Notes under the pieces: model-generated
The model's database searches: none
Seen by the model: only the letters and a program-made list of their open reading frames with translations
What the model was told of the DNA's origin: nothing
Source: Stylophora pistillata
Lineage: Eukaryota
Assembly: GCF_002571385.2 (NCBI RefSeq)
Contig: NW_019217784.1
Span: forward strand, 304,529 to 368,528
DNA: 64,000 nucleotides
Reading direction: 5' to 3'
Program-made: the position numbers and the translations under genes
Shown: positions 31,118 to 55,100 of the stretch, piece after piece
Layout: each line of letters begins with the position of its first letter
Numbering within the stretch: the stretch's first letter is position 1

Positions 31118-34100
31118 ATGAGACGAAAAAGGATATCACCATGTGTACGCTTCCCGACAATTACTCATCTATTGGTAGGTTTTATTTGTATTACCTTCTT
31201 CGTCCGGAATTCAACATCGCTTGAAACTGTTGAAGTGTACGAAGGTTTGCCGCCTGGCAGTGCAGTTTTAAAATTGAAACGCAAACCGGGCATCGTTTAC
31301 TCTCTTCATCGAGATTCCTCCACCGCTGACGGTTTAGGGTTGTTTTACATAGACTCAAAGGGAGTGCTTACTTCTAAAGTAACATTGGATTATGAAGACG
31401 AGCGCGGAAATGAATTCGATTTACTGGTAATTTCGCGGGAAATCTCAAAAACAGAAGTTGGATTTGGAAGTATCGTACGCGTTCGAATACTCGATCGTAA
31501 CGATAACCCACCCAAGTTTCCAAACGAGTTGTACTCTTGTTCCCTGTTGGAAAATAGTCGAACTGGAACTTATGTACAGGGTCTTGAAAGTGTTTTTGCC
31601 AGTGACTTGGATAGTGGTAAAAACTCTGTTCGAAAGTATAGCATCGTGGGTGGAAATGAGGCGGGAAAGTTTGATGTTGACGTCGAGGAGCTAAATGGTG
31701 TGAAGTTTTTGCGTCTCAAAACGAAAGCGCTTATTGATAGAGAAGAAACCCCGTTCTTCGTGTTAACCGTCAAGGTGGAAGACGGAGGAATTCCTTCACT
31801 CTCAAGTACCACTCAGATACGAGTCAACATTCTTGACGAAAATGATCAGATACCGACATTTAAGCCACCGATTTATTCTGTTGCTGTCAGCGAGAACGTA
31901 CCTATTGGCACTTCCGTAGTACAGGTGAAAGCTTTTGATGGCGACGTAGGAACAAACGCTGAAATTTATTATTACTTCAAACCCGAACACGAGTTTTTTA
32001 CCGTGGATGCTCATACGGGAGTTGTGGAGACAGCTTGCGAACTAAATTTCCAGAAAGGAAATTCATTCGATCTCAGAGTGCATGCGGTAGATCGAGGAAA
32101 AACTCCTCGACAAACAGAAACTATTGTACGAATTCGCCTTGTCGATATAGAAAGCTACCCCCCTTTGCTTGGAGCTAATTCTGCTGAATCGGCACCACCT
32201 GTCTTTCGAAAACACACATATTTCGTGAGAATAAGAGAGGATTTTCCGGTTGGTGGTGCAGTAGTCCGCGTGAATGCCCATCAGGGAGGCCATCCACTGC
32301 ACTATGAGAGAGCGTGGCGGTATATTATTGTTAACAATCCTGCTATAATTTTCCACATTAATCCTCGAAGCGGGGTCATTACTCTTCGTGAACCTTTAGA
32401 GTTTGAAAATCACACTTCATTTTCGCTTGTAGTTAAAGCACAAGATGAACAGTCTAAAGATTTGTACGAATCAGACGCCCGAGTTGAGATAGTAATTCAA
32501 GATGTTCATGAGAATTATTTCGCGCCAATTTTCTCTCGTTCGATTGAGGTGGTATCAATCTCGGAGAATTCAGGAAAAAGTACCGTCGTTTCAACGTTTT
32601 CAGCTTCTGACGCTGATTATGGTAGCAATGGAGCAATTGCCTATAGTGTATTCGGAGGTTCAGGACTGGGTAAATTTAAAATTGATGAAAACTCTGGACA
32701 AGTACGATCGATCGTTCGTTTTAACAATGAAATGGAGTCACAGTTTGACTTGCACGTGCGGGCAAGCGACCGCTCAAAACAACCGCTTTATTCCAATGCC
32801 TACTTATTAATCAGACTGCAGAATGGAGGAAAGAAAAGGCCATTTTTCCACAGTCCACGACAGCTTGTCAGTGTTCGCGAAAACAGCGCAAAGGGGACTT
32901 TTGTTGCTCTCGTCAGAGCCAAAATGCGAACGCAGAGATCGAACGATAAGAGACTTTTGGAGTATTTCGTTTCTAACGGGAACGAGGGCGGCAGGTTTTC
33001 GTTGAATTCCACTTCAGGTAGGAGTGTATTTATGTTTTAATTAAACGTCGCTGTGAATGTACAAACAAACAAAGTCTGGAGAAAGTTTGAAGTCTTGATT
33101 CGCATGTGTGGTTTAATACACTTTGCAACCGAGCTACGATAGTTTCCAAAGTCGCCATTAGCTAATTAGGCGTTTGATGGATGAAATATGCATGTATTTT
33201 ACAACGAATTTTCCTTTTAAACCGTAAATGGTATTTTTATACATTATTTACACTCTAGAAATCACAATTTGCGACTTTTCATCACTTGCACCTAAGAACT
33301 TAAAAGAAAATTAATTATCGAAAGGAGACGTGTCAACGCTAAATGCCGCCGGGCAGAAAACAAAATGTTCATGGTATATTTCTGTAAAAATTACAGTCCA
33401 GTTCCGATTACGTTCTCAGCGATCAATCATTCTTCCCCCTGCATGAAAACACCGTAACCGCGAAGGGAAAATAACACTTTCTTTGAATTGTAGAACAATA
33501 GCGTGCTTGTGCGGCAAGATGTTGAATCTTAAGATAAACATTTTATTTAAAAATGGCAAATTGACAGGTGGAGCTGCAGGTTGAAAAACATTTTAGTTCG
33601 AAAACATTTTTTCACTGATTTATTATTTAAAATTCGGCTTGTTATCCCAAAGCAAATTGAGAGCAAAGCCTTATTAAAGAGCTGGAAAATGCAAATTTGC
33701 ATTGGAAGATCTAGAATATCAGGTTCGAATCTGAAAGCTATTAATCAACTATCGTCTTAAACTGGGCTGTTGCTGATAAAGTTGGTTTGAACCTGTGGGC
33801 AATGAATAATATCAGAATGAATTTTTTAACGAATTGATCATCTTTGTGTGGAATATTGTTAGTCAGAGAACATTACAAGAATTCATCATTGCTGTCAATT
33901 TTAGATGGTTGTCTAAAGGTTTGATTAATAAAAGAAACACCCCTTTTTCATTTCCTTTCATTATGGTCTTTATGCCATTATTAAATTATGGAGATGAGTG
34001 AGATAAGTGAAGTTCACTTTGTTCTATTGGCTGACTTATCAGTCTGGCACGTTTTTGTATTCAATTTGATCTTGACAAAAACATTTACTAAGCAACATTT

Positions 34101-37100
34101 AATAACTGCATCATCTATGCAGTAGAAAATGCTCAGGAATGGACATAAACTGGCCAAAAACTACATGTACATATACGAGAAGGAAAGCAAATGTTACAAT
34201 TTGAGAGCAATTTTTTTTCAATTATATTCTAGAAGTGCAGCCATCCATACATAAATGATATTTCCAAAGGAAGGAAAAATGCTCATAAAACATTTATATG
34301 AAAACTAATTATTTCAGAATTAAAAATTGCCATATTGCTGTGACCATATCTAAAAGGAATTCTTTTAATCTAAAATGTGATTGCCGGAAAAGGGTATAGT
34401 CAGTTGTAATGGTCATACTGACGTTGTTGTACTAATTTCAAGCAATAAATGCAAGAAAATATTATTACTGATAATAAACTCTGGCAGATAAATTCTGAAT
34501 TGGTAATCTTAGATATGATCTAGTCTGTTCTTTTAAATAAAACAAAATTGGAAAAATAATTTTCATAAGCTGCAGTACTTTGACTTTATTTTTTAGAATT
34601 TATATTTTCTGTGTCAAGATGTAATTGATCATTTTTGGTTAGATGGTCAATAACTGTATATTTTTGTGGAATGCTATTCCTAGTTATTATCTTTTCATCA
34701 ACAGCAAATGTTTATATAAATAATATGGAGAACTATTCAATGTTGAGCAGGTCATGTCCATCAAATTTCATATCTTTTTCCTTTTTTCCCTGTTGTCTTA
34801 CTCAAGGGGAATTATTGATATTTCAATTACTCAAACTGCAACATATTTTGTACATACTTGATGTAATTTCTTGAGAGGGTCATTGAACACCCTGACCATG
34901 CTAAACAATCTACTTAGTCTTCCTAGGGGGGGCTAATTGATCTCCATGACTTCCAAACAGAATAATGATGGGGGGGGAAGTGCATTATATGGTAAACAAT
35001 ATAATGAGTCTCTGAAGGGGCTTTATGATTTCCAGGACTTCTAAGAAGTGACAGGGTGGGGGTGGGGGAAAGAGTGTTTCCTGTAGTAAACATTCTACTG
35101 AGTCTTCCAGGCTTCATATTGATTTCCAGGACTTTTCATCAGTGATGAGATTGTTGTTGGGGGGGGGGGGGGGGGAGAGGGGATTTATCATGGTAAACAC
35201 CCCATCTTCGGGGTTTGCAAAGAGATTTTCAGGATTTCTAAATGGTGTGGGGTGAGGAGAGTATTTTAGAATCTCTGCTAGGAAATTAACTCATTTTCAT
35301 TTCTTGCTTAATGTTTCAGAGCTTAAATGTGAGGTGCTTTTGGCCAAGCTATTTGTACTCTTAAATTATAATATTTTGATAGTTGCTCTGAATGTTCTAA
35401 TTTGGAGTGGTTGTTTAGAATTGCAGAATCTATATTTCAGTGATTTTTGCCAGTTAATATAAATGTCTACCTCAACACTACTTCTCATATCTTTTTTTAA
35501 AATTGTTTATTTTTAGGAATAATTTCAACTGCTGGCCAGCTTGATCGTGAAAGTAAAGATCTGTATATTCTTGATATTTATGCACATATTAAGGGTGCTC
35601 CATTATCAATGAGCTCCCCTGTTCAAGTTGTCGTCACAGTTTCTGATGAGAATGATAACAGTCCATCATTTGAAAAAAACAACTACCAGGTAAGAGCTTA
35701 AAACTCTTTATCTCGGTTGAGTGACCAAGGCAGAATTTCTCCTTACATAATCAATACAATATCAAACAGACAAGTGATAGAATAAATAATAATGTCATTA
35801 AGGGTATTATTAGTTGATCCAATATCAAATTCTCTAAACTAACATAAGAAATGAATGGCAGATTGTGTGGAGAATTACTTAGATCTGGGAGTGAAATAAA
35901 GAAATAATAATCCAATACTGATACCCCTTATTTCTGCCTAAAATCACTGGGGATTCTTGAAATATTAACAGGTAATGGGAATTACTCTACTGGTTTGAAA
36001 CATCCAGCTTTTACCTTTCATACTCAAAATAAGGGGAAAAATTAGATGAGACAGTAATATTGTTACACACTCAAATCAAACCAGAAAACATTTTACTAAA
36101 GCACAAGCTCCATACTTTTAGAATACTCCTCAAGCACATGGTTTTCTCTCATTTAATTCCCAACATACATTGTGGTTCTTGGGCTTGCAGTCACACACTC
36201 AACATGACATGTCAAGCACCCTACAAAATTGTAGTAAAACCACGCTAGAGTAAATGAGATGCTGGAAGACATGTGACATAGTTACCTGACATGTTTTTGA
36301 TGCGTTTCTCTACCTGGTGAATTTTTCTCAGAGATTTGGACTTATTGACCACAAACTAGAAATGTCTGGATATTCTTTTACAAAAACAAATATTCATTTT
36401 CTTGTTATAGGTTTTTGTCACAGAAAACATTGGTAATATATCAAATTTGCTATGTCTAGCAGCCTATGATCCTGATGCTGGTAAGAATGGACACCTCACA
36501 TACTCTATAATCTCTGGTAAGGGACCATTTGCCATCGACCCTGTCCTGGGGGTTTTATCAGCCAAAAGATCTCTAGATTATGAGAAACAGTCACAGCATA
36601 GACTAGTTATACAAGCAGCAGACAATGGCATGCCATCGCGGAAGACAACTGTGGAAGTTAACATTGTTGTGGAAGATGCTAATGACGCACCTATATTCTC
36701 TCAGGATCATTATGAAGGTACATTGCATGAACTCATGTTGTTAGAGGTGGATTAATTAGGCGTGCTTTGATTATTTTTTATGTGGTAGCCCCCCTCACCA
36801 CCCCCCCTTTCAAGAAAAAAACACATATATTTATAACCTGTAGGCACCTTAGTACAAAAGAAAAGATTTTTTATGCCTTCCTCCGCTAATGGAGATATTC
36901 ATGCCATTCCCACTCAGTTTTCCTCAGATTAATATTCATGTTCTTACATGTGAAGATCAAGCCCACTGTAGGTACAATTATCATTAACTCTCATTGACTA
37001 AGGGATCAATTATTCATGGTCTTCAAGTAATGTATCTGTACATCCATAGTTGCCACAGGTTAGGAAAAAGTCGCGGAAATAAAACTTTTCAAGATCAGGG

Positions 37101-40100
37101 AAAAGTCAGGGAAAATTCAGGGAATTTCACTTTGAATTTGGGAATGTTTACATCTTTGAAATATTAGTCAGAGAAAAGAGAAAATTCATGTAAGTGTAGA
37201 GTTGTTTATCTTGTCTTGGTCCTCATCATGATGTTACTCAATGATATACATTGTTAAGAGCAGTTTAGAGGGAAAAAATTGTTATTTCAGTCGATCAGGG
37301 AAATTTTATGTTTATCAGGGTAAAGTCAGGGAACTGACATCTGCAAGAAGATATTAATATTTTATAATACACTTAGTGCATGAATCCATGATCAGACAAT
37401 GTAACCCAAGCACTGTATGACTGATTATCATATTCTATTTCATTATGAAATACTTTAAGAGTGATATTAGGATCTCAAGGTGATTTCAGATCTTCAAGTC
37501 ACTTTCAGCAAGATCTGCTTCCATCTTAATTCTTCTTCCTTTTTCCCTTTCACTTTCTTTGTTCAAACTTAAGTCAGGAGAAAGGTTTGATGTTCAACCT
37601 CTGTGATCTTTATATTCCTTATCTTCGATGGAATATGGTTGGCATTTTCTTCCCTTCTCTCTCCTCTTTGTTTCTGGAAGAAAAGAGGAGAAAAGAAAAC
37701 AGTTGACTTTTGATAAGTGTTGACCTATTTGCTATCCCTTATTACTAACATTTTTACCAGCAACGAAAATTTTGAAGGTATTTCAAGCTACAATGTCCAT
37801 GCATGCTGTTTAACACAGAAATACATTAATTTGTTTTCTTTGTTGGTAAACTGTGAAGAATTCTTTATGTGGATTAACATTTCTTGTTGATATTGTGGTC
37901 CAATTTCTAATTCATATAATAAGCTCCGTTTTCTGAAATTGTTTTAATTAATCTACCGGTAATTACATGTGCATTAACGTTTTTCACGTGTGCTTAATTT
38001 TTTCACCCATAAAAACAGAGTGATCTAATTAAGCTAATATCAGTGATGTTACTTTATCCTACATTTAACTTTTTGCATTTGTCTTAAAACACATTTGCTG
38101 GTAAAGTAACTCATGATTGCTCCTCTATAATACAGTAACAGTCTTGGAATCTGCCAAAATTGGAACAGATCTTCTGGCTGTGTTTCTTGTATCTGATGAA
38201 GACGCCGCTGTGAAGGGTAACATTAGCCCACTGTTTTGATTTTCTCTTGGAACTTTATTTTCTGTCTAGACCATTTTCTTCTGCTAAAACGCATTGACTT
38301 AAACAGAACCACATGTTTGAACTGACGTGGAGATACTGCGCTCGTAACATTTACCTTACTGAGCTCTATTGGTACATCTTTGACTAATCAGTTAGTTTTT
38401 GTTGACCTTGACCAGTTATAAAGAAAAACTTTGAGACAACAAATGTTCGCAAAAAAAAAGGAACTCGGGTCGATGGTAAGTGGTTGGTTATGGACGGGAC
38501 TGAGGTACTAATCAGTTCCCAGAACATAATAATCTTGATTGGATCCTTTGCTGGAGAAAAAAAAGGAATATCGTTAAAAGTTAGGTATACCAGAGTGTCT
38601 TGAAATGGAAGGTTCCTTTTCAAAGCATCTTGTAAGCTCAGTGGTTTAGTTTTTGTGAGGTCCGACAATTGTTCCTTTGGTTGCAGCTAGGACTGGAATT
38701 CAGGTAGAAACGGTGGAAGAGATAAGCACAAGCGCACTGGGTGCGAGTCATTTGACTTTCTTCTCTTGTAGAGAGAGACTACGACCATTTTTGCGTAGAG
38801 TCGTATTAAAATGCTACTTTGGAATATGATATGTGGGCATTTGATGGCTTAACGACTGTTGCAGTTGTTTAGTGAGCTCTTGTTCTCCTCTGGGAGGTTG
38901 GTGACTCCGTTTGTGTTGTGGAATTTTCAAAGTTGCTGGATTCGTTTTTGCTGCGGAACTCTTCAGTTGCTTTAGAAACTTGCCCTCGAGAAGTAACCAA
39001 TCATATGCTCCCAATAAAGAACAGCTACATGTCCCATGGTTCCAGTTGTTGGAATGCGCGTTATTTTCCCGCGCTTTTGACTTGTGTGTCCTAATCTTCC
39101 CATGAAGCCGAATCCCTGACGTAAACTGAAAACTTTCACGTCTGAAAACTACGGACATGTGTTGTCTTAGTTGAACAAGGTTTTAATGACCGTACGGTAC
39201 TCGAATGGTTTTCACAACAACTGCAGTGACAATTTATTAAACATTGAAAATGTGCGAGAGTGCATGGAGTGCACGACAGGAATAAGCAGGAAACGGTACG
39301 ATACTGGAGTTACAACTGTTGAAATTTTATTATTTGAACGGTACGGTGTGTATTGTGTTGGTGGAGAATTGAAACTTGCATATCTATAAATATCTAAATT
39401 CAGGCTTGTCAAACCTCTTTGCATGCCCTGTTTAGCTTTAATTTCGTGAGGTAAACTATGGAAGTTATGCATTTAAATATCAAATTTCAATGAACGTGAT
39501 TGCTAAATTTTGTGGTGCCAGTGATTTTAAGATTTATCAGTTTACCAATAGTTGTTGTCTGTGCTGTTAGTTTTCAATGAACGAAGCAAAATTATGACGG
39601 TTCAGATGAACAATAAATGGACTGAAATTTGTATTAAGAAAAAAAGTAAAACCAGTTTGGAGAGTTTTGCCAGCCACTTTTTTAGAAAGTCGGTGCTAAA
39701 AGTTAAAACTATCAACCAACCCTTTACGAAGTTGTATTTGCGAAGTACTTTCAGTTATCCTCCAACACCTGTAACTTTGTTTTTAAAGTTACTTTTATAC
39801 TCATAGCAATATATTGTCACTTTCTCTCGCAGTGACTATATTAGAAAACACAGATGTGGAAGATACTGTAGCTGTGCTAACCACTTCTGATCAGGACCGG
39901 GACAAGAATGGAAAATTCACTTGTAGTATGGAAAACATGGACCTGGAGACCATGGACACGTTTCAAGTTAGAAGAACGCCCGAAGGCTGTGCTCTGGTTC
40001 TCACTGGCTACTTGGACTGGTACCGTGCAAACCAGTATTCCTTCTCGGTCCGCGCCACTGACAGTGCCGAGAGCGTGCAAAGGAAGTCTGTCACTGCTAA

Positions 40101-43100
40101 TGTCACCATTCACGTGCAAGACACGAATAACCACGACCCAGAGTTTTTGCAGGCATCTTATTGGGTTGCTTTACCTAATGATGCCAATATGGGTGCAACT
40201 GTACTCACTGTCAAAGCGCGCGACTTGGACGAAGGTAAAAACGCTGATATACGATACAGACTTACCAGTGACGTCTTTACTATTCATCCTACCAAAGGTA
40301 TCATCACGCTTAAGCAAGGGTTGGGATCTGTCACCAGCAAGAAATATGAATTCTCAGTCCGAGCAACCGACCAGGGAACGCCTAACAGACAAACTGCCGT
40401 GAGTGTTTCTGTGACTGTTCACCCCCTGTCTTACATCTCTCCAAGGTTTTTGAGGCCTGTTTATCGAAAAGTAATCTCTGAAATTTTCAAAACAGGCGCC
40501 GCGCTGCTGACGGTGCGCGCGCCGAAAAGTGTTGATTTTGGTCGTTCTGTCGAGTACTTCATTGTGGGGGGTGATCCACTGAATCAGTTCAGTGTGGGAA
40601 CTAGAAGTGGCATGCTCACCCTCAAAAAACAGTTGGATTACGAAAGAATTAATCACTACGTGTTGGTTGTGCGTGCTGTGCAGAATGGAGTATCATCTTC
40701 ATTGCCAACCGAGGTACGTATGGACAATATAAATGCTTCCTTGTGAACTGACGAAGAGACTGGAGTCCTACGGCCAAAACAGTCCAATACATTTTTGACG
40801 AACTATGCCCACAACATTTGACTGACCAATAATTCCTCACCAGACTCTGATGATGCCTGATGCTCAGGTTGTTGAAACATCACCCACTCCTATCGAAAAA
40901 AAGTCCTTTTAAGGATACTCGCACCAGACAACCGGGAAAATATCGCCGTCGGAAAGGAGGCGTTTGATTAATCTTCGTCGACTTCAAATTGGTTATCAAC
41001 TTGAGTATTAAAGATTACCCCCGACATTATATACCCGTTCCTTTTTTCCACATTTATATCTGCTGCGCGCAGTCGTGTGCGAAATTAAGTTTCTCTATTA
41101 TTCGCTTAACAGGTCAAAGTCTTCGTGGATGTCACAGACGTGAATGACAGGACCCCACGGTTTGCTCTCCCGGTGGATCCATTTGTGATAACTGTGGATG
41201 AATTTCAACCCCCAGGAACTCTCATTGCCGTTTTGAAAGCATATGACAGAGACACAGGCAACCATTCTCTTATCACGTATAGACTGGAAGATGCTAACTT
41301 TAAAATTCACTCATACCTCGGAACCATAACGACCAAGCTTGAATTATATCATTCTCAAGGAGCCTCGCGATCTTTCGTTGTCACGGCAACCGACTCAACA
41401 CCCCCATACCGAAGTGCTAGAGCCAATGTGGTGGTCATGATAAACAAGGCCACCCCTCCCCCAAGGTTTCCCGATTCGGCGTTGGCCGAATACGTGCTAG
41501 AAGACACACACGTTGGAAAGTCCCCGTTACAGTTACGTTCCCTTGCAGAAAGTCGTCTAACCTTAAAGTACTGGATAACAGACGGTAACCAAGACAACCA
41601 ATGGTGCATAGACACGACTGGTCATGTACGAGTTAATAAACCGCTGGACCACGAACAGAAAAAATCCTTTCACCTTAAAATCAAGGTGGATGATGGCATA
41701 ACAACTCATATCGCACCGTCCGTCTTGTTCACGGTGGAAGATGTGAACGACGACGTTCCTACGTTTAGCGCAAACGTATATAAGTTCTACGTGTCAGAGA
41801 ATTTACCTGCGTACAACACGGTGGCTAAAATGTAAGCCAAAGATCGTGATGAAGGCTCCAACAGCGAGATAAAGTATTCAATTGTTGGAGTAGAGGATGC
41901 TCGCTCCAGAGGAAAATTTGAAATCCATCCAACTTCCGGTCAACTGACAACAACTGAGGTGCTAGACAGGGAGTTTATGGAGCAGCATGTGATCATGGTG
42001 GAAGCAGAAGACGCCGGGAAACCTTTGCTGAGTAGCCTGGTACGCTTGACTGTGATTGTCACTGATGTGAACGATAACACTCCAGTGTTTGCTACAGAGT
42101 TGTTTAGGGCTGGAGTACCAGTTGATGCCAAGGTTGGATCTAGGATTTTTTCAGTGGTGGCATCAGACATGGACTGGGGAGAGAATGGCCTTCTGAGGTG
42201 AGCTTAAAGAAATGCACCCTCTTCATTGGTTATACTTAGATAGCTCAGATTTGCTTCCGCAAGAACTCCTGGCATTAGTAGTTTTTACGTTTATTCCTTC
42301 CTTCCTCATGTCATTTTTTCTTTTTCTTTCCATCTTCTCTCTTTTTGCCTCTCTACTGTTTTGCCTTTCTACAAACCTCTCTGTTTTCCTCCCCAGATAT
42401 TCTCTTTAATTTTTTTTTTCACTCTCTCTCATCTCAGTGGTGGCTCTCATACCAGTGTTATTTCGTTTACAATCCACTCTTTAGACTTCCTTTAAGATTG
42501 TATCAATACCAATCAAGAAAACTGTGCCTAGTTTGATGAAATAGATTTCAAGCAATCTCTAATTCTTTTTGCTTACAGTTACTCAGTCATTGCCGGTAAC
42601 TCTGATCAGTTCATCGCTGTTGACCCAACTGATGGAACTGTCACTGTTGCCCGTCCCATGACGTCACTTAAGTCAATTAATTTTACAGTCATGGCACGTG
42701 ATCAGGGTCAGCCCACCAGAAACGCTACTGCCGAAGTAATTGTCTCTATTTACGCCGTTGAGGGCCCTCCAAGATTTCTTGCTTCTTCTTACAACCTGCG
42801 TGTAGCAGAAAACAAGAAAGCGGGAACTGAGGTTATTCGCGTGCAGGCGGCAAGTGTCGATCCTGTTATTTCCTATAAGATATTGAATGGAAATTCTAGA
42901 AAACATTTTCATTTGAATGAAGAGACGGGATTGCTAACTACAACGAGATCCCTTGATTACGAAAAATTTGCGCGTTACCAGCTTGTTGTCATGGCGATAG
43001 ACAGTAGTAATCGAATGAATTACGTCAAAGTTGTCGTACATGTGATAAACGTCAATGATAATGAACCTTACTTTGTGGACATTCACAGCGGTGCTTTTGA

Positions 43101-46100
43101 AGGACAGGTGTTAGCTGACGCCGTCGCCGACAGTCACGTGATGTGGCTTAAGGCACATGACCGAGATGGTAGTGACGTCATAAGCTACAAGATAGATAAC
43201 GAGAAAGCGGCTTCGTATTTTACTGTAAACTCTGAAGGTAGTTTAAGGACAAAGAGAACATTGAGAGGACTTCAGTCTCCGTTCGTTTTCAGAATTGAAG
43301 CTTTAGATAATGGGATTCCTTCCAGGAGTACTTTTACGTCGGTGAGGCTTGTTTTCTTGAAGTATGATACTCAACAGAGAGAACTGCAGGTGACTGTCCC
43401 TGAAGACGTTAAGCAAGACGTCGTGCTCATTAAAATAATAGATTCAGCTAGAATTAAAAATCCTAGCTTCTCGATCATTTACCCTGTCGGTGCACCTTTT
43501 CGTATAGACAGTGAAACTGGGGAGATGCGAACCTCTCGTCCACTTGATTATGAATCTACACAGAATTACAGCTTAATACTGCAAGTACAAAACTCCAAAA
43601 ACAGCGAAGAATACACCAATATCGACTTAGTAGTTGATATTGAAGACGTAAATGATAACTCCCCTACCTTTACTATGGAGAAAGAGGACGGGACGTATAT
43701 CGCTAAGGTCAATAGAAATCCCGTCCAGGGTACGGTGGTGTACACGCTGACGGCATCAGATCGAGACTCTAGAGGCCATCTGCGTTACTCTCTGGTCAGC
43801 AGTAGCGACGAAAACGCTGTATTTGAGGTGGAGGGCGAGAGCGGGAGAGTGAAGACAGTCACTCAACAAGTGTTAATGGCAGACTTTTACAACATCACTG
43901 TGAGCGTGAGTGATAGTGACACGCCTTCACGCCACACACGAGCCATACTGCACGTGCAAGTTAGAGAATACCCGCCCACCTTCAGTCGGGAGGAGTATGT
44001 GTTTAGAATCGAGGAAAACACGCGGAAAGGATTCACCATCGGCCATATTAAGGCGCACAGCTACTCTGGAGCGTCACTTTCATACACTGTTGTACACGGT
44101 GAGAATAACGAATCTTTGATTCCAAATACTGATAGTTAAGTAAAGTGTTGTAGTAGTTTTGTGTCACTGTGATGCAAATAGGTGATGAGAATAAAGAAAA
44201 TGTCATTTAAGAGCGACTTTTCTCGAGTAAATTTTCTGGAATGGCTGACAGGAAAATGTAAGTTTCTCATTCTGGAGGATAAGCCTTTGCATCCTGGAGA
44301 TGAAAACTCAGAGTGTAAAAATGAGACCAAATTAAATGTGATAATGTCATCTGCCTTCGCGCGCAAAATGCTTTAGATCCAATACTACAAACAGTAACCT
44401 AGGATGCACGCACTTTACAAAGCAAACCAATCAGAAGTCATCTGCAAAAAAAGTACGCATACCCTAAGGTAAGAACAGTGTTGTTGTTGTTGATGATGTT
44501 AACAAATCAGTGCGTATTTGAAATGCGCAGTGCTGGGTATGATTTGGGATTGTATTTTGTGTTCTTTCTCTAGGAAACGTTCAGAAAAAATTTATCCTGG
44601 ACAGCAACACAGGGCGTCTAGCTCTCCCCGATCCTCTGGACTATGAGCGTGACTCCAATGTTTACTACATCAGGATAAAAGCGTTCGAGGTTGGCGTTAC
44701 TCAGCGCCAGTCTTCCGAAGTCAACGTTCAAGTCTTCCTCAAAGATATGAATGACAATGCACCAGAATTCTCTCAACAACGTTACAGGTACATTTTACCA
44801 GAAAGTGCTCCTGTGGGAACAATGGTGATGGTTGTTTCAGCGCATGACAGTGATTCAGGAGTAAACGGACAGTTCAGATATTACATGGATAATAATTACT
44901 TTTCTGTAAATCCTTACACTGGGGAAATCACCACAACGAAACCGTTGGATTACGAGACCGCGCGCTCGCACACCTTTGCTGTAGTGGCGCAAGATGGCGG
45001 GAAACAAGTGCTTAGCGGAACGGCGAGAGTCGAAGTGACGCTTCAAAATGTAAACGACAATCCACCGCGATTCTCACAGACAGTTTATAATTCACATGTG
45101 AATGAGGATGCTGGCCCCGGTGAACTGGTGACGACTGGTAAGTTGCTTAGTAAAACGTTTGATAACGGTTGATATAGTTGTCAAAATGTAGTTAGATGCA
45201 GAGTTTTGGATTTTTGTAAAAGTAACTTTGAGTGTCCACCCTGTTATTACGAATAATAAACAGCTCTGATGTTTACTGTTTGAGTTTAAGGATGACCTTA
45301 TGATGTGTTACGTCATTTTTCGTTTCCCAAATAGGGAATGGGTAAGTTAATCCCGGAGGACCAGCGTAGTTTAGTGATAAGACAATTCCACTCTCACTCA
45401 CTTTCCTTTTTAGTTCAAGCAGGTGACCTTGATCTAGACCCAGTCTCCTACAGCATCATCTCAGGTGATAATAACAGTAATTTTGTGATTAACAACCGGA
45501 CGGGTGTCGTCCGATTGGTGGCACACAGGGCGCCAAGCCTTGTAGGTCCGTACTACGAGCTCAACATTAGTGCCTCAGATGGCCTTCACACAAGCCAGGC
45601 CGTGTTAATAGTGGCTATTCAGGATATAAACAATCACAAACCAATGTTCAAAGACTGCGACAAGTACCAACCGGTTATCGCAGAAAACCTTCCTCCGGGA
45701 TCCCCAGTTATTCAGGTTTGTTGGGTTAGCTCGTTATTAGCAACCCTGTCTCCTAGAACATTGTTCTCCGACGAAGGGCTAACGCTCGAAACGTCAGCTT
45801 TTGTAATCGTTACGGTGGCCAATTTACCACTTCAACTTTGTTGATATATCCAAATTATTTCGTTACTCCCACCGACGCAGCGCCAAACAGTTTCTTTCGA
45901 AACTATCAGCCTTTCTCCATATTACTTTACTGTACTAACAGTTATCTGATCAACTAAATAAGAATGGTAAAGCAGCATTGGTCGTTACTCAACTAATGGT
46001 AAATTAAATGACAAGCAAGGTTAACGTTTCTCGCAAAGTGCTTTGCAAAGAGAGTTGATGGCGAAAGCATCCATGTGTTATGGAAGATAAGAATCCCTAA

Positions 46101-49100
46101 CAACGCCGATTTTTCCTTTCGGTGGATATCCCAAAGGACATGAATTAGATGCAAAACACCAGGATAGGATGATAGGAAAATCTGTTAGGTTTACAACTAT
46201 TTTAGTATGTTTTTTTTTTTTAGCCTTTTTACTCCCATGATATCTTTAGTACTTCTCCTTACTGTTCTCGTACATAGCTTATCATTTTAGTTTGGAGAAT
46301 TCAGCATGGACCAATTGATAATACCCTTACTGATGTTTTTCGTTAGTCTCATCACTTGTCTGCATAATGTTGTACCGTTGATATTGTAAGGAGAAATTCT
46401 GCCCTGGTCACTCGTGGGAGCTAAAGGGCTTATGGTATTTTCATCATGGTTTGTTGGTTTCTAATGAAAGTTAGGTCAGTGCAGAAGATAGAGACGTGGG
46501 TCTGAACGGAAAAGTCAGTTACCAAATTGAGCGGCCATCTATCGGGATACCTTACTTTCAAATAAACAGTAATTCCGGTCTGGTAACCACTGCCGTGACC
46601 TTTGACCGTGAATAGAAGCGATCCTACCAGATAAGGATCACGGGAAAGGACGGAGGACCTTACCAAGAAGAAGCAGAGAGGCTGATGGGATTCTGTCAAC
46701 TGGAAATAAAGATCGAGGACGTCAATGACAACGATCCTGTTTTTAGTAACACTCCATTCAAAACCAATATAAAGGAGGACCTAGAAAAAGGGGATATAGC
46801 ACTTCATGTAAGCGCCACCGATGAGGACGCCGGTAGTAATTCGCTCATAACGTACTCTCTTGAAACACCAAACAAGCAATTTATGATATCCAACAGCACG
46901 GGAATTATAACCACCAAAGGTCCACTGTCCTCGACAAAGTACCAGTTCAGAGTGATTGCGCAAGATAATGGAAAACCGCCGCGGTCCTCTAAAGCAGTTG
47001 TAGACATCAGTGTTTACAAAGCCGGAAAGGACCCGCCAAAGTTCACGGAAGACGTGTATATCGCACGTGTTCGCGAGGATGTGCGCCAAGGGAATAGGGT
47101 CACGCGCGTGTTGGCAACAAGCCCGGATCCCCAGAATCTGATTTTTTATAGTATTGTGAATTTTCCACAGCCTGTTTACATTGATCCGGTTCAAGGAGTT
47201 ATAGTGACTCAGCGTACCCTTGATTACGAATTAGCATCAAATTACACAATACACATCCTTGCTCAAGATAGTCAAGATCCACCGCTTATGTCGTTCGCTC
47301 GGCTTGAAATTCTCGTGGAGGACGTCAATGATTCACCGCCTCAGTTTCCGGTGTCAAAATACGAAGGACAAGTTGCCGAGAATTCACCGGTCGGCAGCTC
47401 TGTCATCGAAGTGAAAGCCGATGACCCAGATAAGGGTGAAAATGGAAGAGTTTCTTACGCCTTCATCAGAAAAGAAAGCAATGAATCATTTGAGCTAAAC
47501 TCGAAGACTGGGCTTATCACCACCAAAGAGGTATTTGACCGTGAGGAGACTGGACGTTACACCTTGATTGTGGAAGCACGTGACCATGGAGATCCTCGCA
47601 AAGCGTCAAGTTGTCTTGTGGATATCATAATCAGTGATCAGAACGATAACCGTCCTGTGTTTGATCAGACTGTGTACAATGCAACTGTTCACGAAGATGC
47701 TTCTAGAGGAACACACATTCTCGAAGTATCTGCAGTGGATGACGATATTGGAAACAATGCTGTGGTGAACTATTTCATCACGGCGGGAAATACCCGAGCG
47801 GCTTTTGCCATTAACAAGGATCTTGGACAAATTGTCGTGGCGAGTTCTTTAGATCGCGAAACACAAGATAATTACAAGCTCATGATACGGGCAGTTGACG
47901 GGAAAAACTCTGGTACGGCTGTGGTCATTATACACGTCAAAGATGTCAATGATAACAACCCTGTGTTCGCTAACACAACGTATGTAGCCAAAGTATACGA
48001 AAACCAGCCAGCCGGAAGTTACGTCACGACATTGTCAGCATCTGATAAGGATCTCGGACTGGGTGGAGAGTTCTCGTTTTCGATCAGTGGTCAGGGAAAA
48101 GACGCTTTTGATATCGACCCAATTACCGGTGTCGTAACGACTATCAAACCTCTAGACCGAGAAGCTAAGGGGCGTTACGACTTCCTTGCGTTTGCCACTG
48201 ACAATCCTAATGCAGAACCGGGCTCTCGGAGGACCGGTTCTTGCGATGTGGTGGTTTGGATCCGGGACATCAATGACAAAAGTCCGCAGTTCCCGGATGA
48301 TGTATACGAGGGAACTGTGAAAGAGAACCAGCTTCCAGGCGCTCGTGTCATGGTCTTGACGGCAGTCGACGAAGATGACCCTAATGAAAACGGAAACGCT
48401 GTCATGTCTTACAAACTAATTGATAATGCAGGTGGACTCTTTGAAATCGATCGCGACTCAGGATTAATTTCAACGCGCAAAAGACTAGACCGAGAAACTG
48501 TCGACGAATACCGACTGGTTGCCAACGCTACAGACCGAGGTCGACCGGCGCTCTGGGGTCAAGTGGAGGTCATGATCAGGGTGGCGGATGACAACGATCA
48601 TCCGCCGCGGTTTACTGAGCAGACTTTTGTCGCCAGCATTTTCGAGAACGCATCCATTGACTCGTCCGTGATGACACTCAAGGCCACCGACGAAGACATC
48701 GGTAGTAATGCCAGGTTACGCTACAGTATTATAGAAGGGGGCGCTGATGCGGAGGAGGATGGCAGTAGAATGTTCCGTGTTGTGGAAGATACTGGAGTCA
48801 TTCAGGTAGCTAGAAGCTTAGATTACGAGACACAGAAGCAATACACTCTAAAAGTCATGGTAAGTGAGATTGAGGACTCGCATATTTTGGCGAAAGAGCA
48901 TATTTTAACGGTTTGTCGTGTGGGCCTTATTCCAAAGATAATCCCTTTCAAGTTATGTTTATACTCCAGGCCTGGTCTCTTCGGGCGTATTTCTCGACTA
49001 ATAAACAAATAAATTCCATGTTGCCGAGTGTCTTTGTAGGAATAGATCACAGATATTGGAGGATAAAAAAAAAAAATGGCCCACGAGATACAGCCAAGTG

Positions 49101-52100
49101 TGTCAATGTTCTTACCACGGTTAGACATCCTCTGTGATTTATTACTGATCAGAAGCACGGCAACATGGATTCTATTTGATTTACATCATAGAGAAGCAAG
49201 TTGCTGTTAATGGTGAGTCCAAGCAAGGAAATGATCTTCGCCGGGTGGACTGCGAAGTAACTAGTATCTAGGGGGCCTGAATTCGAATCCTGTCGAATCC
49301 TGAGTTGTTAAAGAATCTCCTGCAATTGTTTAACAGTCCCTCCCCCTGGCAGGATCTCTCTTTTTTTTCGCTTAATTTTCATCTGCATGTCTGTGAAGTT
49401 TATCTCATTAAGAATTGTAATTTCAACTTCATCTATGCGTCTGTGAGATTCCGTCCACACTCATGCGTTTTCGTTTGAAAACAGATATTTTTCGATGTGT
49501 TTTGGCCTTCTGTCCACACTTAAATGCTTGAAAGCGGAGCCTTTTGAAGACGATGACGAAAACGCATTTGTGCGCACGGCGTTTAAAGCTTGTGAGGTAA
49601 TTATTTTTACATCATAGTTTCGACCTCTGTCACTTTCCTTCTCCCTCTTTTCGTTTAGGTGCGGGACTCTAGTCCTCCTTTCTTTAGCGACAAAGCGGAA
49701 GTAATGATCACCGTTCAAGATTACAATGACAATCCCCCAGTATTTAATCCCGTATCGTACGCGGAAATAGTCAATGAGGATGTTACCCCTGAGTATTTTA
49801 TCATGAAAGTTACCGCCACGGACACGGACTCAGGCAGCAACCGAGACTTCAAGTTTTCCATTTTTGAGGGTGATCCCGAGGGACAATTTCGTATTGACCC
49901 CGATCGGGGAAACCTTTATGTACACCGCAATCTGGATAGGGAGAAACGAGCGGTTTATCTGCTCACTGTTAGAGCTACGAATACTGGTGAGTGAAAAACA
50001 AATGTTGGACAACTTTAGTTTGACAATTCAGGAATATCGCTTAAAAAATGTCGCCGGACATTCTCCAATTTTGATCAGGAATATTTGGTCACGTGACGAG
50101 TCTAAACTATCACGCGCGAGGAGGAATAGAGTAGCATCAAGCCATGTCTGAATATCAGATGTATTGTAAACTGCGATATTTACTGTCGCTGTTTTAATTT
50201 TCAGCAACTCCTCCCCTGTATGGTCACGCTTCAGTTAAAATCACCTTGAATGATGTGAATGACAATGGTCCAACTTTCCACCCGTCAGAAATCCGCTTCA
50301 GTGTCAAAGAAAACTCTAAACCTCCTCAGTACCTAGGAAAAATTAGCGTTGATGATCCAGATCTTGATCCTCCTAATGGAGCTCCGTTCTTTTTTGAGAT
50401 TGTCACCGGCAACGATCAAGGCCTCTTTGAGCTGAATAACAGAACGGGAGAGATGTCTACACGAGCAGTGTTTGACCGTGAAGAACGCGAATCTTACAGG
50501 CTCGTGGTAGCAGCGTGGGACAGTGGCAACCCAAGGAAAAATACAAAGACTTCACTCTTTGTGCACATTTTAGATGAGAATGACCATCAACACTCGGTAG
50601 GAACGTTAAATCTCGAGCTGAATTCGTATCAAGGCAAGTTTCCAGGGGGGAAGATTGGAAAAGTGTACGTGGTGGACGAAGACATCAATGATGACAGACA
50701 TTACAAATTGATATCCAATAGCTCCCGTTATTTCACCATTCAGCCGACGACAGGAATGATAATAAGCCAGCCGAATCCTCCTGAAGGAAATCACTACTTG
50801 TCTGCCATAGTTTCTGATACTAACAGCATCTTCACATCGGTGATCTGTTCCGTGTTCATCAAAGTCAAGCAGGTATCAGCTGAAGCTGTCCACAACAGTA
50901 TGGCGATAAGACTCGGTGGTGTTACGCGTAAAGAGTTTATCGTTTCAGTTCTAGCGAGATTCAAGGAGTCAGTGGGAAGCATTCTTGGAACTGACGAAGA
51001 CAACGTGGATTTATTTAGCGTTCAGGACGCACCAAGGGTACCGCGAGCTATCGACGTTAGGTTCGCGGCTCATGGAAGTCCTTACTATGCCCCTGAGAAA
51101 ATGATCGCTATCTTGAAGAACAACCGACCCAGTTTGAACAAATCATTGGCTGTGTTTAACGCGAAAGTTTTGGCCGTCGGTGTAGATGAATGCCTGCATG
51201 AGCCGTGTGAGTCTGGTGGCTGTACAAATGTGTTGATTGCTAATGGAGAGGTGGAGGTGATTTCTGAGAGAGGAACGTGTTTTGCGTCCATAGTTGCGAT
51301 CCTTGAACCACGCTGTGATGATTGTAAGGGGAACCAAAAAGATATGACGAGGTGTAAATCAAAGCCGTGTTTGAATGGAGGCACGTGTATGGACACTCCT
51401 CAAGGTTAGTTTTCCATGCTAGAAATTCACCCTTTGAGGGAGGAAACATGAAATATTTTTATGATCATTTGGGAAATTTCTATTGTAGCAGTAGCAGATG
51501 ATAAGGAACGCTTGTCTCCTTTCGCCCGGTAAACGCAGAAAATATGCTTGGTTTGGAAGCCATTTTTCAGTAATAGGATTGTTCAGTTTTCAGAAATGAA
51601 TCCGGTAATATATACCAGTTGCTCTCCAACGAAGACGTTATCTTTCACCGTTTGCATTGCCTAACCAACGAGTACTTACATATGATGCACGATCTTCGCA
51701 GTAGATAGCGCTATTTAAGCAATAGCGAAAATCAACGAATACTTGCTAAAATGAATGCTGCTTTCGTTTTTCGAATTTTGTTCTTTTATTAGGACACAAG
51801 TGTCGATGTATTAAGGATCACGATGGTCCCAACTGTGAATTTACAACGCGAAGCTTTGTGCCTGGCGAGTGGCTGTGGCTTCCAGCACTGGAACAGTGCA
51901 GTCTAGGTTCCCTGTCACTCGAGTTTGCCACCAGAGAACCAAACGGGCTTCTGTTGTATGGAGGTCCAACTTCCCCCGTGCGGGAGGGAGACGTGCATGA
52001 TTTTATAACGCTTGAACTGGCAGACGGTAAGATTCGTGTGAACATGTCTCTTGGGGACCGCAATGATGTGGTGCGCGCCGGAGTTCCTGGTGGGATGGCC

Positions 52101-55100
52101 CTGAATGACGGTGAATGGCATCATATTGAGGTCTACCGGGACGGATCAGTAAGTGACCTTATTTAAATCGGTGAAATAGTGGTAACCATTATGTTGTGTT
52201 CTTGCAAAACAAACAAACAAACAAACAAAAAACAATTCTAAAACTATCACAGTTCTTCCCTTAGCCAAGGAATATAAATAGACCAGTAAACTATAGGGAG
52301 TTATCTGCAATGGACCTAATATCCGTCCAGAACTTGGTGCCATGAAAAACTCCGGCAGCTGTGGGCCATCTCGCTGGGAAGGCTTAACCTCCTGTGGGAA
52401 AATGAAGTTAATTGACGGGTTTTCCTGTCTCCTACGCCTACGAGTGCGTGAAACAAGGCTTTAACCAATCATGGCAAAGAAAAGCCTGTGGTCAACCAGG
52501 GTTTGCAAACTTGGTTTAAATAAGGGTTTACGTTTTATCGTGAACAAAATTAACTTAAAAACAGGAGGATCTATGAGAAAGATCTAGCCATGATAAGAAC
52601 GACCACCAAACGGGTAACCAAAGAGAACGAGAATGGTCCTCATTGTTGAAGGCCTATCAGGCCGCAATGCTGTAAATGACTCAAAATAGATGTGTAGTCT
52701 AGAGCATGATAGAATGGAGATGTCTGCTTTAAAACGCATGCCAAAGTGATATAGTCACAAGCTCAATAACCCATTGAATGGTTTGGATGCTGACAATGCT
52801 TAATTCGAGAAACTAAGTGTGAATGGCGAAATTATGAGTAATACAATTGTCCAGCTTCTCAACTTGAGGTAGAGCAGATGAAACTAAAAATTCAGAATAT
52901 AAGACATGAGAAGAGAAGAAGAAAGACGACTTGTCTTCCATGACTGGTTTCTTTCTGTTTCCATTTCTACAACAATAGTATACGGGAGCATTATGGTACT
53001 CAACCATTGAGATCGCCATCTTAAAGGCCAATCCGGAACCATGATTGGTTCGTTTCTACCACGTGGTACAAAATACTCTTCTCTGATTAGCTGTGTACCC
53101 ATACTGCCTCCGTATGCTACTCACAACAGATATAGACCACCTTGTAAACCTATAATAATGAGTAGAAGATTTTTAAAGCTTCTCATCTTTGCTGATGTTT
53201 TTTTTTTTTTTTTTATAAATCTTAGTTTGTACGTGTTACGGTGGATAAGTGCAAAGGAGCACGGGTGGAGGCGGGACGCGTGTCTAGAGCTGTCGAAGAC
53301 ATGTCTCACTGTTCTTCCACAGCAACATTGAGAAAAAAGAACAAGTAAGGCTGCACTGTCATTTAATTTCAAGCCTTAATTTGATGTGGAACTTTAACGA
53401 CGTACAATTTTTTTCTGTTTTATGTCTACTATTACGCTATTTTATTACATTAGGGCAACAGGCCGTGCAAAACATACGATGGTAGTACTGTAGTAATAAA
53501 AAGACGGAAATCAGAGTAATAAGTAGAGCGCACGAAAATTTCCAATCTTCAAATTATTTACGTCCTTCAGGCTGGACTTTTTAAGCGACTAAATTTCAAG
53601 GGAAATTGATTTTACATTTTTTTATTATGGAAACTTCCGTAATTTCGTTTGTGATGTTTTGTTTTGTCTCCTGACGCGCCTTATGCAATTAATGTGATTC
53701 TCAGATATTGCCGTAGGGACTATAATTCGTATAAAATACTTGCGGAATGATAAATTCCCAATTGCATGGTTTGACATATGCGAGCAGACATTTTGCCCAT
53801 TACCCTTACTACACTCCCAACTTGCAAGATATCGGCGCGTGTTACCAATGCTTAATTATCGAACAAGATGTTATGTACAACCACTCAGATATCAATGGCA
53901 GTCTGAAATGTAAGGGAATCATCTCTTGTGTGTTGGGGAATGGTGTTAAAATCTGAGCTCTTACTTTTCAGGTTTTTGAATTTAAACGGGCCCTTGCAGC
54001 TGGGTGGAGTATCAACCACTAATCTTCTTTACCCCAAACTGACTGTTGCCAATTACGAAGGCTGTATACGGAATGTGATAAATCAGGGCAGATACTACGA
54101 TCTGAAGACACCCATCCACAGAAATGGCACCAAAGAAGGATGTCCTATGGTGGATCAACATTGCAGGAAACACCAGTGTGACGCCCGGTCCAAATGTGTT
54201 CCTTCCTGGACTGGGTACTCATGTCATTGCCAATTTGGTTTTACCGGTTCCACTTGTGGCAGAAGTAAGTTTAGAATTGGAAGTTTTGTACACGCAACTC
54301 TCACCGTGAACAGCTGTGAGAGAGACTGTCTTATTAGAGTGAGTGAATTTTCCTTGCGACCAGATCGATGTAGCTTTCCATTCCCATTTCCCAAGGTTTT
54401 TTTTCTTTGAGCAATTTTCAATCGAATGTCGAAAGTGCGTTGGTTTTACCTGACTTTACTCTGTGATTGGTCCAGAAAACTTGTGCTATCCTCTCGACCA
54501 ATCAGGTGCAAAACTGAAACAATTAACGTTTTCCCGCGCTTCAAGCAGTTTGCTCGTTTTCACTTTGAGTTCTCATTGGTTAATGAAGTGCCCCTGTTGT
54601 TCAGTTAGTCATGCGAAACGCAAAAGTCAAAAGCGCTTTATTTACAGAGGAGTGAAAAAAACGAGAGAGGTTTGGGTCGGGTCGCGTACTGAACCGACCT
54701 TTGTTCTGATCGGTCGCTGAGATTATTTTGGTGGTCACTTTAAAACTGCTCCACAACCAACCGTGTTAGGCTCTTCTAATGTGCTCTTGTAAAGCTTAAC
54801 CCTTTCTTTTATTTATTTTTTACAGGGACACGTGCCTTATCCTACACGGAGGGAAGTTATACCGAGTTCCTTTTTCACCTGCACAAGTTCGACTATGAAC
54901 CGCGGGAGACTAAGATCAAAATGCAGATCCGAACGCGTGATCCGGATGGAGGTTTGCTGATGCACAATAACGGAAGTGAAGAAGGCCGCTTTAGTTTACT
55001 TGAGGTGAGATCGTAAGCTCGTTTTTTATCGTTTGCGTTTGAAATTTCTCTCAATTTTTCTATAGTACTGATGTACTGTAAGAATCAGAGTTCATGTCTT

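What the first reader, a model, noticed from the sequence alone, without database searches (positions are those of the whole stretch)
41833..46615. Giant classical cadherin with two in-frame stop codons but otherwise intact architecture
Seen: across 4,478 codons and 18 introns there is no frameshift and every junction is GT-AG, and the TM and catenin-binding tail are recognisable. Yet TAA (41833) and TAG (46613) interrupt cadherin repeats. Each is one C>T change from Gln (CAA, CAG), though Glu/Lys codons are also one change away. Inference, four options: (a) a very young pseudogene or null haplotype of one classical cadherin paralog; (b) consensus errors; (c) recoding (readthrough or editing) or splice bypass; (d) conversion to a secreted ~1,327 aa ectodomain-only cadherin, since a signal peptide and ~12 repeats precede stop 1. 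A secreted form would be notable if the organism is a coral, because cadherin-like proteins are reported in skeletal organic matrix.
Basis: partly seen in the sequence, partly recalled or inferred. Interest (0 to 1): 0.8.

Follow-up and report, generated by a model that had tools for sequence, protein, structure and literature searches.

The report
Two false stops in coral cadherin
The two stop codons in this giant coral cell-adhesion gene are in the reference assembly only, because four other DNA and RNA data sets of the same coral read ordinary amino-acid codons there; the gene is intact and expressed, and the finding is an assembly error.

Summary
The window does read TAA at 41833-41835 and TAG at 46613-46615, in frame, inside cadherin repeats of a giant cnidarian-type classical cadherin gene (about 31118-58527, + strand).

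Contigs of four public runs from four studies (2 DNA, 2 RNA) were laid on 41300-47200, and none holds either stop.
- Stop 1 reads TAC or TAT (Tyr).
- Stop 2 reads GAG or AAG (Glu or Lys).

Eight places in this 5.9 kb carry a letter that no run has. At six of them, both stops included, the runs carry two other letters. The reference letter is therefore a third letter at a polymorphic site. This is a sign of heterozygous sites wrongly resolved in the assembly, not of mutation.

Other corals have E/K/Q/D at stop 2 and F/K at stop 1. The RNA contigs are spliced in frame across four GT-AG introns. At the observed rate of such letters, about one false stop is expected in a coding sequence of this length.

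Verdict: an assembly artefact in an ordinary, expressed gene. There is no pseudogene, recoding or secreted form. The scan has found reference-only stops in other windows of this genome before; five notes on four other genes say so. The problem is probably genome-wide.

The parts
31118..58527 (+). Giant classical cadherin gene. The candidate start ATG is at 31118, followed by a signal-peptide-like hydrophobic stretch. The terminal TAA is at 58525-58527. The exon list was not rebuilt in full.
   Evidence: Open frames and translations. Pfam finds Cadherin, Ig_Shg, EGF, Laminin_G and the cadherin cytoplasmic domain on the exon pieces.
41833..41835 (+). Stop 1: TAA in the window. The third letter, 41835 A, is in the reference only. 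Runs read C (X1, X2) or T (X9), giving TAC or TAT, both Tyr.
   Evidence: Orthologous exons of two other corals have F and K at this place.
46613..46615 (+). Stop 2: TAG in the window. The first letter, 46613 T, is in the reference only. Runs read G (X1, X9, X10; GAG, Glu) or A (X2; AAG, Lys).
   Evidence: Twenty related proteins, seventeen of them close coral orthologues, have E, K, Q, D, A or T at this place.
41300..42197 (+). The 3' part of the exon that holds stop 1. The open frame begins at 41110; the exon start was not determined. The exon ends before a GT donor at 42198.
   Evidence: RNA contig X9 record 22 covers 41300-42195 without a joint.
42579..44098 (+). Cadherin-repeat exon. It holds the reference-only letters 43096 (T; runs A) and 43169 (G; runs C or T).
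44574..45137 (+). Cadherin-repeat exon.
   Evidence: RNA contigs X9 and X10, junctions, Pfam.
45414..45715 (+). Cadherin-repeat exon.
   Evidence: RNA contigs X9 record 23 and X10 record 12, junctions, weak Cadherin match.
46475..49009 (+). Large cadherin-repeat exon that holds stop 2. It starts in phase 0 at 46475; its 3' end was not determined, and 49009 is the end of the open frame. It also holds the reference-only letters 46525 (A; runs C or T) and 47093 (A; runs C or T).
46073..46073 (+). Reference-only letter in an intron: A in the window, G in X1, T in X2.
46469..46469 (+). Reference-only letter in an intron: A in the window, T in X1 and X2.
50885..51298 (+). DE-cadherin-type Ig-like domain (Ig_Shg), the membrane-proximal module of non-chordate classical cadherins.
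   Evidence: Pfam PF24811, E 1.9e-20.
51924..52148 (+). First part of a laminin G domain. Further LamG and EGF pieces lie in exons between 53907 and 56872.
57379..57438 (+). Transmembrane segment, 20 hydrophobic residues (AGLAILVVTLILSACITFVY) followed by RRSRPKK.
   Evidence: Read directly from the translation. No transmembrane predictor was run.
58312..58476 (+). Catenin-binding cytoplasmic domain of classical cadherins.
   Evidence: PF01049, E 1.2e-10. The same place was found in the whole-genome family search.
45766..45920 (.). High-copy repeat of about 150 bp in the intron between the exons that end at 45715 and start at 46475. It is not part of the finding. It explains the enormous contig depth and the many joints and loose ends reported there.
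   Evidence: depth and loose ends. One search gives at least 48 copies at 95-99% identity elsewhere in the genome.

Best explanation
The gene is an intact, transcribed and correctly spliced classical cadherin of a stony coral. It has many cadherin repeats, a DE-cadherin-type Ig-like domain, EGF and laminin G domains, one transmembrane segment and a catenin-binding tail.

The two in-frame stops are errors of the reference assembly. At places where the colony or population carries two letters, the assembly holds a third letter that no read-derived contig has.

Shown:
- The stops are absent from all four independent runs.
- The reference-only letters sit on polymorphic sites.
- Orthologues agree with the runs.

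Inferred, not shown: how the wrong letter arose. The likely route is that a single-base ambiguity left by the assembler at a heterozygous site was later filled with a wrong base.
For: 1. Reads. At 41835 the window has A; X1 and X2 (DNA) have C and X9 (poly(A) RNA) has T, giving TAC or TAT, both Tyr. At 46613 the window has T; X1, X9 and X10 have G and X2 has A, giving Glu or Lys. These are four studies and four samples, and none holds a stop.

2. Reference-only letters. Outside the intron repeat there are 8 places where no covering run agrees with the window: 41835, 43096, 43169, 46073, 46469, 46525, 46613 and 47093. At 6 of them the runs carry two other letters. If these were independent private mutations, 6 of 8 falling on the 0.3% of sites that vary among the runs has a chance of about 2e-14.

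3. Likely source colony. X2 is 2016 DNA, one sample filed as four runs. It differs from the window only at these 8 places, so it is probably the source colony or a near clone, and it lacks both stops.

4. Word shares. No run among 20 holders has more than 0.94 of the sampled words, as expected if every sample lacks the words that span these letters.

5. Orthologues. There is E, K, Q or D at stop 2 in 16 of 17 coral orthologues and F or K at stop 1. At the four other coding reference-only letters, the residues of the runs (I, A/V, H, H/Y) are those most orthologues have. The window's residue is absent at two of these places and present in only one of 20 relatives at each of the other two.

6. 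Expression. RNA contigs join the exons in frame across four GT-AG introns. The X9 contig passes through the place of stop 1, and the X9 and X10 contigs pass through the place of stop 2.

7. Copy number. The locus is single-copy in the assembly, so the contigs are not from a paralogue.

8. Expected count. There are about 1.5 reference-only letters per coding kb. The chance that one makes a stop is 0.04 to 0.055. This predicts about 1.1 false stops in 13.4 kb of coding sequence, and P(2 or more) is 0.31.

9. Other windows. The scan's notes list 112 in-frame-stop notes for this genome. Five follow-up notes, on four other genes, found the flagged stop in the reference only. These are leads and were not tested here.

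10. Assembly method. A coral genome paper of matching size describes ALLPATHS-LG followed by three rounds of SSPACE and GapFiller. ALLPATHS-LG scaffolds carry ambiguity marks. One isolated single N remains in the window at 23410.
Against: All four runs are assembled contigs, not raw reads. Contigs drop minor alleles, so a stop allele carried in heterozygous state, or by few cells, could be hidden.

It is inferred, not recorded, that X2 is the source colony.

X10 has no contig over 41835.

The mechanism of the error is not shown. A purely random fill would also have produced some letters that match an allele, and I saw 8 of 8 that match none. By my own arithmetic from the counts that is about 4% likely under random fill ((2/3)^8), so the process may be biased in a way I cannot explain. 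The wrong letters are mostly A: five A, two T and one G.
Confidence: 0.9

Rival explanations
1. The stops are real private nonsense variants of the reference colony: a null haplotype or a very young pseudogene. The assembly happened to pick that haplotype.
For: The letters are in the assembly. Contigs can hide the second allele of a heterozygote (a caveat stated). Earlier follow-up notes on other genes of this genome left 'private nonsense variant' open.
Against: Both stop sites would have to be tri-allelic. So would four more of the eight reference-only places within 5.9 kb, which is about 2e-14 likely by chance. X2 is otherwise identical to the window and lacks both stops. The reference-only letters also replace residues that orthologues keep. 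The count of stops is what a random wrong letter predicts.
Confidence: 0.06
2. Programmed recoding: stop-codon readthrough, RNA editing, or removal of stop 1 by an in-frame 78-nt exitron (41832-41909).
For: The window letters GTAAGC at 41832-41837 look like a splice donor (note s1-783896).
Against: The DNA runs themselves have sense codons, so there is nothing to recode. The differences cannot be editing of an encoded stop, because they are in DNA. The RNA contig X9 record 22 runs unbroken through 41300-42195, and no joint is reported at 41832-41909. With the real letter the donor-like motif reads GTACGC or GTATGC, so the artefact letter itself creates the consensus.
Confidence: 0.01
3. Conversion to a secreted, ectodomain-only cadherin of about 1,327 residues that could enter the coral skeletal organic matrix.
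For: Only the position of stop 1 downstream of a signal-peptide-like start.
Against: Stop 1 is absent from all three runs that cover it. In X9 (poly(A) RNA) one spliced contig covers the place of stop 1 and a second covers that of stop 2, both with sense codons; a 43-base hole at 44962-45004 separates the two. The downstream exons keep open frames, domains and the catenin-binding tail.
Confidence: 0.01

Closest known systems
Nematostella vectensis classical cadherins Cdh1 and Cdh3 (Pukhlyakova et al., bioRxiv 10.1101/488270; Clarke et al. 2016, PMC4948710)
   Same: A very large cnidarian classical cadherin. It has tens of extracellular cadherin repeats, then EGF-like and laminin G domains, one transmembrane segment and a cytoplasmic tail with catenin-binding sites. 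The paper reports 31 repeats, three EGF and two LamG domains, and a size of about 480 kDa. All of these domain kinds are found here.
   Different: One-to-one orthology with Cdh1 or Cdh3 was not tested. The number of repeats was not counted on a joined model. This genome has three loci with the catenin-binding tail.
Drosophila DE-cadherin (Shotgun) and other non-chordate (type III) classical cadherins
   Same: A membrane-proximal Ig-like domain of the Shg type (PF24811, E 1.9e-20) with EGF and LamG modules and the PF01049 tail.
   Different: There are far more cadherin repeats, and the lineage is different. Function was not tested.
Reference-only in-frame stops reported by this scan in other genes of the same genome (notes s1-775569/s1-775550, s1-780652, s1-773132, s1-771610)
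   Same: A single-letter stop in an otherwise intact gene, absent from other samples of the species and from related corals.
   Different: Those notes left the choice between a private nonsense variant and a base error open. Here the third-letter-at-a-polymorphic-site pattern argues for an assembly error. I did not re-test the other loci.

Membership tests
Classical cadherin (non-chordate / cnidarian type) | Tandem extracellular cadherin repeats | tested here: met
   PF00028 was found on every large exon piece, with E values down to 4e-141. There are at least 17 canonical DxNDxxP linkers.
Classical cadherin (non-chordate / cnidarian type) | Membrane-proximal Ig_Shg, EGF and laminin G modules | tested here: met
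   PF24811 at E 1.9e-20, PF02210 and PF00054, and PF00008.
Classical cadherin (non-chordate / cnidarian type) | Single transmembrane segment | tested here: met
   A 20-residue hydrophobic segment followed by basic residues, read from the translation. No predictor was run.
Classical cadherin (non-chordate / cnidarian type) | Cytoplasmic catenin-binding domain | tested here: met
   PF01049, E 1.2e-10, above the curated cut-off.
Classical cadherin (non-chordate / cnidarian type) | Binds beta-catenin and p120 and forms adherens junctions | not testable with these tools
   This needs biochemistry or imaging.
Pseudogene or null allele | The disabling change is present in independent reads of the organism | tested here: not met
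   Neither stop is in any of 4 runs from 4 studies.
Programmed stop-codon recoding or RNA editing | A stop codon encoded in genomic DNA across individuals, with sense reading only at the RNA or protein level | tested here: not met
   DNA runs X1 and X2 have sense codons at both places.
Assembly error at heterozygous sites | The reference letter is absent from all read-derived sequences of the same locus | tested here: met
   There are 8 such places in 5.9 kb, both stops among them. The locus is single-copy.
Assembly error at heterozygous sites | The wrong letters coincide with sites that are polymorphic in the species | tested here: met
   At 6 of 8 places the runs carry two other letters. The chance of this is about 2e-14.
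Assembly error at heterozygous sites | The source colony's raw reads show two alleles at these sites and none shows the reference letter | not testable with these tools
   Only contigs were available. Contig breaks of X10 at 41712-41900 and 43077-43099 hint at heterozygosity.

The most novel reading that the evidence does not exclude
The reference colony really carries a cadherin haplotype with two nonsense changes, for example a somatic or germline null lineage. The contigs of the other runs, and of its own short-read runs, collapsed this haplotype away.
Probability: 0.04. Interest if true: 0.3.

Novelty: not a real feature. Interest (0 to 1): 0.08.

Why it matters
The finding has no biological weight, because the cadherin is ordinary and intact.

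It matters for the scan and for users of this assembly. In the stretch tested, the assembly carries about 1.4 letters per kb that no read-derived sequence supports, and these sit at polymorphic sites. About one in twenty of those in coding sequence makes a false stop.

This can explain many of the 112 in-frame-stop notes on this genome. Candidates for recoding, selenocysteine or young pseudogenes in it should first be checked against reads.

Tried and rejected
- Second copy or haplotig. A whole-genome DNA search found only the locus itself plus copies of an intron repeat, so the run contigs are not from a paralogue.
- Exitron or splice bypass of stop 1 (note s1-783896). No joint was seen at 41832-41909, and the X9 RNA contig is continuous there. 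The donor-like motif depends on the artefact letter.
- Editing. Rejected because the DNA runs already differ from the window.
- Secreted truncated form. Rejected because the stop is absent and the X9 mRNA contigs cover both places with sense codons.
Rejected: the real codons are TAC/TAT and GAG/AAG.
- Same-species proteins. The hits were used as orthologues only.

Left out on purpose:
- Joining the exons into a full-length model and searching with it. Exons were searched apart, by reference, so full-length relatives of about 4,400 residues were outside the length range of the word search.
- The large representative-protein search, because the family scans left nothing open.

Not resolved: which program step wrote the wrong letters. 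The ALLPATHS-LG ambiguity plus GapFiller route is an inference. It does not explain why all 8 letters match neither allele.

Full report
**What is in the window**

The + strand between about 31 kb and 58.5 kb holds a long series of open exon frames. Pfam finds these on the exon pieces, each searched by reference:
- cadherin repeats, PF00028, with E values down to 4e-141;
- a DE-cadherin-type Ig-like domain, PF24811, E 1.9e-20;
- EGF and laminin G domains;
- the cytoplasmic catenin-binding domain of classical cadherins, PF01049, E 1.2e-10.

The first ATG of the first large frame (31118) is followed by a hydrophobic, signal-peptide-like stretch. The last exon holds a 20-residue hydrophobic segment followed by RRSRPKK, and it ends with TAA at 58525. 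This is the architecture described for the giant classical cadherins Cdh1 and Cdh3 of the sea anemone Nematostella: 31 repeats, three EGF domains, two LamG domains and about 480 kDa (bioRxiv 10.1101/488270).

TAA is at 41833-41835 in VAKM*AKDRDEGSN. TAG is at 46613-46615 in TFDRE*KRSYQ. Both are in frame inside cadherin repeats.

One search found 20 public runs that hold the stretch or a part of it, from 9 studies, all of one organism or of coral metagenomes. I laid the contigs of four runs from four studies on window 41300-47200, which covers both stops. X1 and X2 behave as DNA, because they cover the introns. X9 is poly(A) RNA-seq. X10 is RNA by its exon-only coverage.

| Place | Window | X1 | X2 | X9 | X10 | Codon in the runs |
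|---|---|---|---|---|---|---|
| 41835 | A | C | C | T | no contig | TAC or TAT, both Tyr |
| 46613 | T | G | A | G | G | GAG (Glu) or AAG (Lys) |

No run holds either stop. The locus is single-copy in the 397.6-Mb assembly. The DNA contigs match the window at about 99.9%, introns included. They are therefore the same locus and not a paralogue.

**Why this is an assembly error and not a private allele**

Outside a high-copy intron repeat, eight places carry a window letter that no covering run has: 41835, 43096, 43169, 46073, 46469, 46525, 46613 and 47093. At six of them the runs disagree among themselves with two other letters: C/T, C/T, G/T, C/T, G/A and C/T. The reference therefore holds a third letter exactly where the species is polymorphic.

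Only about 17 of some 5,750 non-repeat sites vary among the four runs. If the eight reference-only letters were independent mutations, six of them landing on such sites has a chance of about 2e-14.

X2 is a 2016 sample filed as four DNA runs. It differs from the window at these eight places and nowhere else outside the repeat. It is probably the colony the assembly came from, or a near clone, and it lacks both stops.

The word shares agree with this. No run among the 20 holders reaches more than 0.94 of the sampled words, as expected if every sample lacks the words that span these letters.

**Independent support from other corals**

A word search with the 798-residue exon piece after stop 2 returned coral orthologues at 64-87% identity. 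Seventeen of them align across the stop. They carry E (9), K (3), Q (3), D (1) and A (1) in the otherwise invariant FDRE-x-KRSYQIRI.

I fetched the orthologous loci of three coral genome assemblies. Two cover the exon of stop 1 and have F and K there.

At the four other coding reference-only letters, the window gives F, G, Q and N. The runs give I, A/V, H and H/Y. The orthologues side with the runs:
- at 43096, I in two of three;
- at 43169, V, T and I, never G;
- at 46525, H in 15 of 20;
- at 47093, H or Y in 8 of 20, and N in one.

**Expression and splicing**

The RNA contigs join the exons at 42197|42579, 44098|44574, 45137|45414 and 45715|46475. All four introns are GT-AG and keep the frame. 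In X9 one contig runs unbroken over the place of stop 1 and a second over that of stop 2. No joint is reported at 41832-41909, where a companion note (s1-783896) proposed an exitron. The donor-like GTAAGC there depends on the wrong letter; with the real letter it reads GTACGC or GTATGC. The gene is therefore transcribed and spliced as a full-length message with sense codons at both places.

**Is two stops surprising?**

There are six reference-only letters in about 4.0 kb of coding sequence laid, or 1.5 per kb. A random single-base change in this coding sequence makes a stop with probability 0.040. With the observed bias of the wrong letters (five A, two T, one G) the probability is 0.055. Two false stops in a gene of this size is what the error rate predicts.

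**Likely origin of the error (inferred)**

The size of the assembly (397.6 Mb, 5,513 pieces) is close to that of the published Stylophora pistillata genome, 400.1 Mb before contaminant removal. The dates of the runs and an earlier follow-up note (s1-775569) point the same way. That genome was assembled with ALLPATHS-LG (HAPLOIDIFY), followed by three rounds of SSPACE and GapFiller (PMC5730576). ALLPATHS-LG scaffolds carry marks for single-base ambiguities (PMC6434015). From my own knowledge, the plain FASTA shows them as N.

One isolated single N survives in the window at 23410. A later gap-filling step that replaced such one-base gaps with a wrong base would give the pattern seen. I could not show this. 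It also does not explain why all eight letters match neither allele, which by my own arithmetic from the counts is about 4% likely under a purely random fill ((2/3)^8).

**Wider pattern**

The scan's notes list 112 entries on in-frame stops in this genome. Five follow-up notes, on four other genes, found the flagged stop in the reference only: the giant lipoprotein gene (two notes), MOCS1A, an STXBP4-like gene and a giant coiled-coil gene. I did not re-test them. The mechanism found here would account for them.

**What I left out**

The totals of 4,478 codons and 18 introns, and one-to-one orthology with Nematostella Cdh1 or Cdh3, are therefore unchecked. The large representative-protein search was not used. 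All runs were available as contigs only, so allele fractions in the source colony could not be counted. That is the one remaining test.

**Verdict**

The letters are in the window but not in the organism. The feature is an assembly artefact in an ordinary, expressed classical cadherin gene. Interest is low.

Noticed in passing
window 45766-45920 (intron); also G000 C33:562222-562514 and C504:5446-5736: A repeat of about 150 bp with at least 48 copies at 95-99% identity across the genome (3,149 first-look candidates) and contig depths in the millions. Some copies sit as adjacent inverted pairs, which suggests a MITE- or SINE-like element. Weaker repeats lie at 46225-46421 and 44058-44254.
   Followed up: partly
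window 23410: An isolated single N in otherwise clean sequence (GCATGGNGACAAA). It may be a leftover single-base ambiguity of the assembler at a heterozygous site. The only other Ns are the 222-base gap at 8193-8414.
   Followed up: no
G000 C1:408619-408783 (- strand, about 40 kb beyond the window's end) and C301:133860-134045: Two more loci carry the classical-cadherin catenin-binding tail (PF01049). One lies tail-to-tail about 45 kb downstream of this gene on the same scaffold. The coral therefore has three classical cadherin loci, two of them neighbours.
   Followed up: no
window 41300-47200, whole stretch: Letters that no read-derived contig supports occur at about 1.4 per kb, and they change residues as well as making stops: F for I at 43096, G for A/V at 43169, Q for H at 46525 and N for H/Y at 47093. 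Protein models from this assembly will carry spurious substitutions.
   Followed up: yes
window 46613 and 47093: Real non-synonymous polymorphisms of the cadherin are seen among samples: Glu/Lys at the place of stop 2, His/Tyr at 47093 and Ala/Val at 43169. There are also synonymous ones: TAC/TAT at 41835 and CAC/CAT at 46525.
   Followed up: partly
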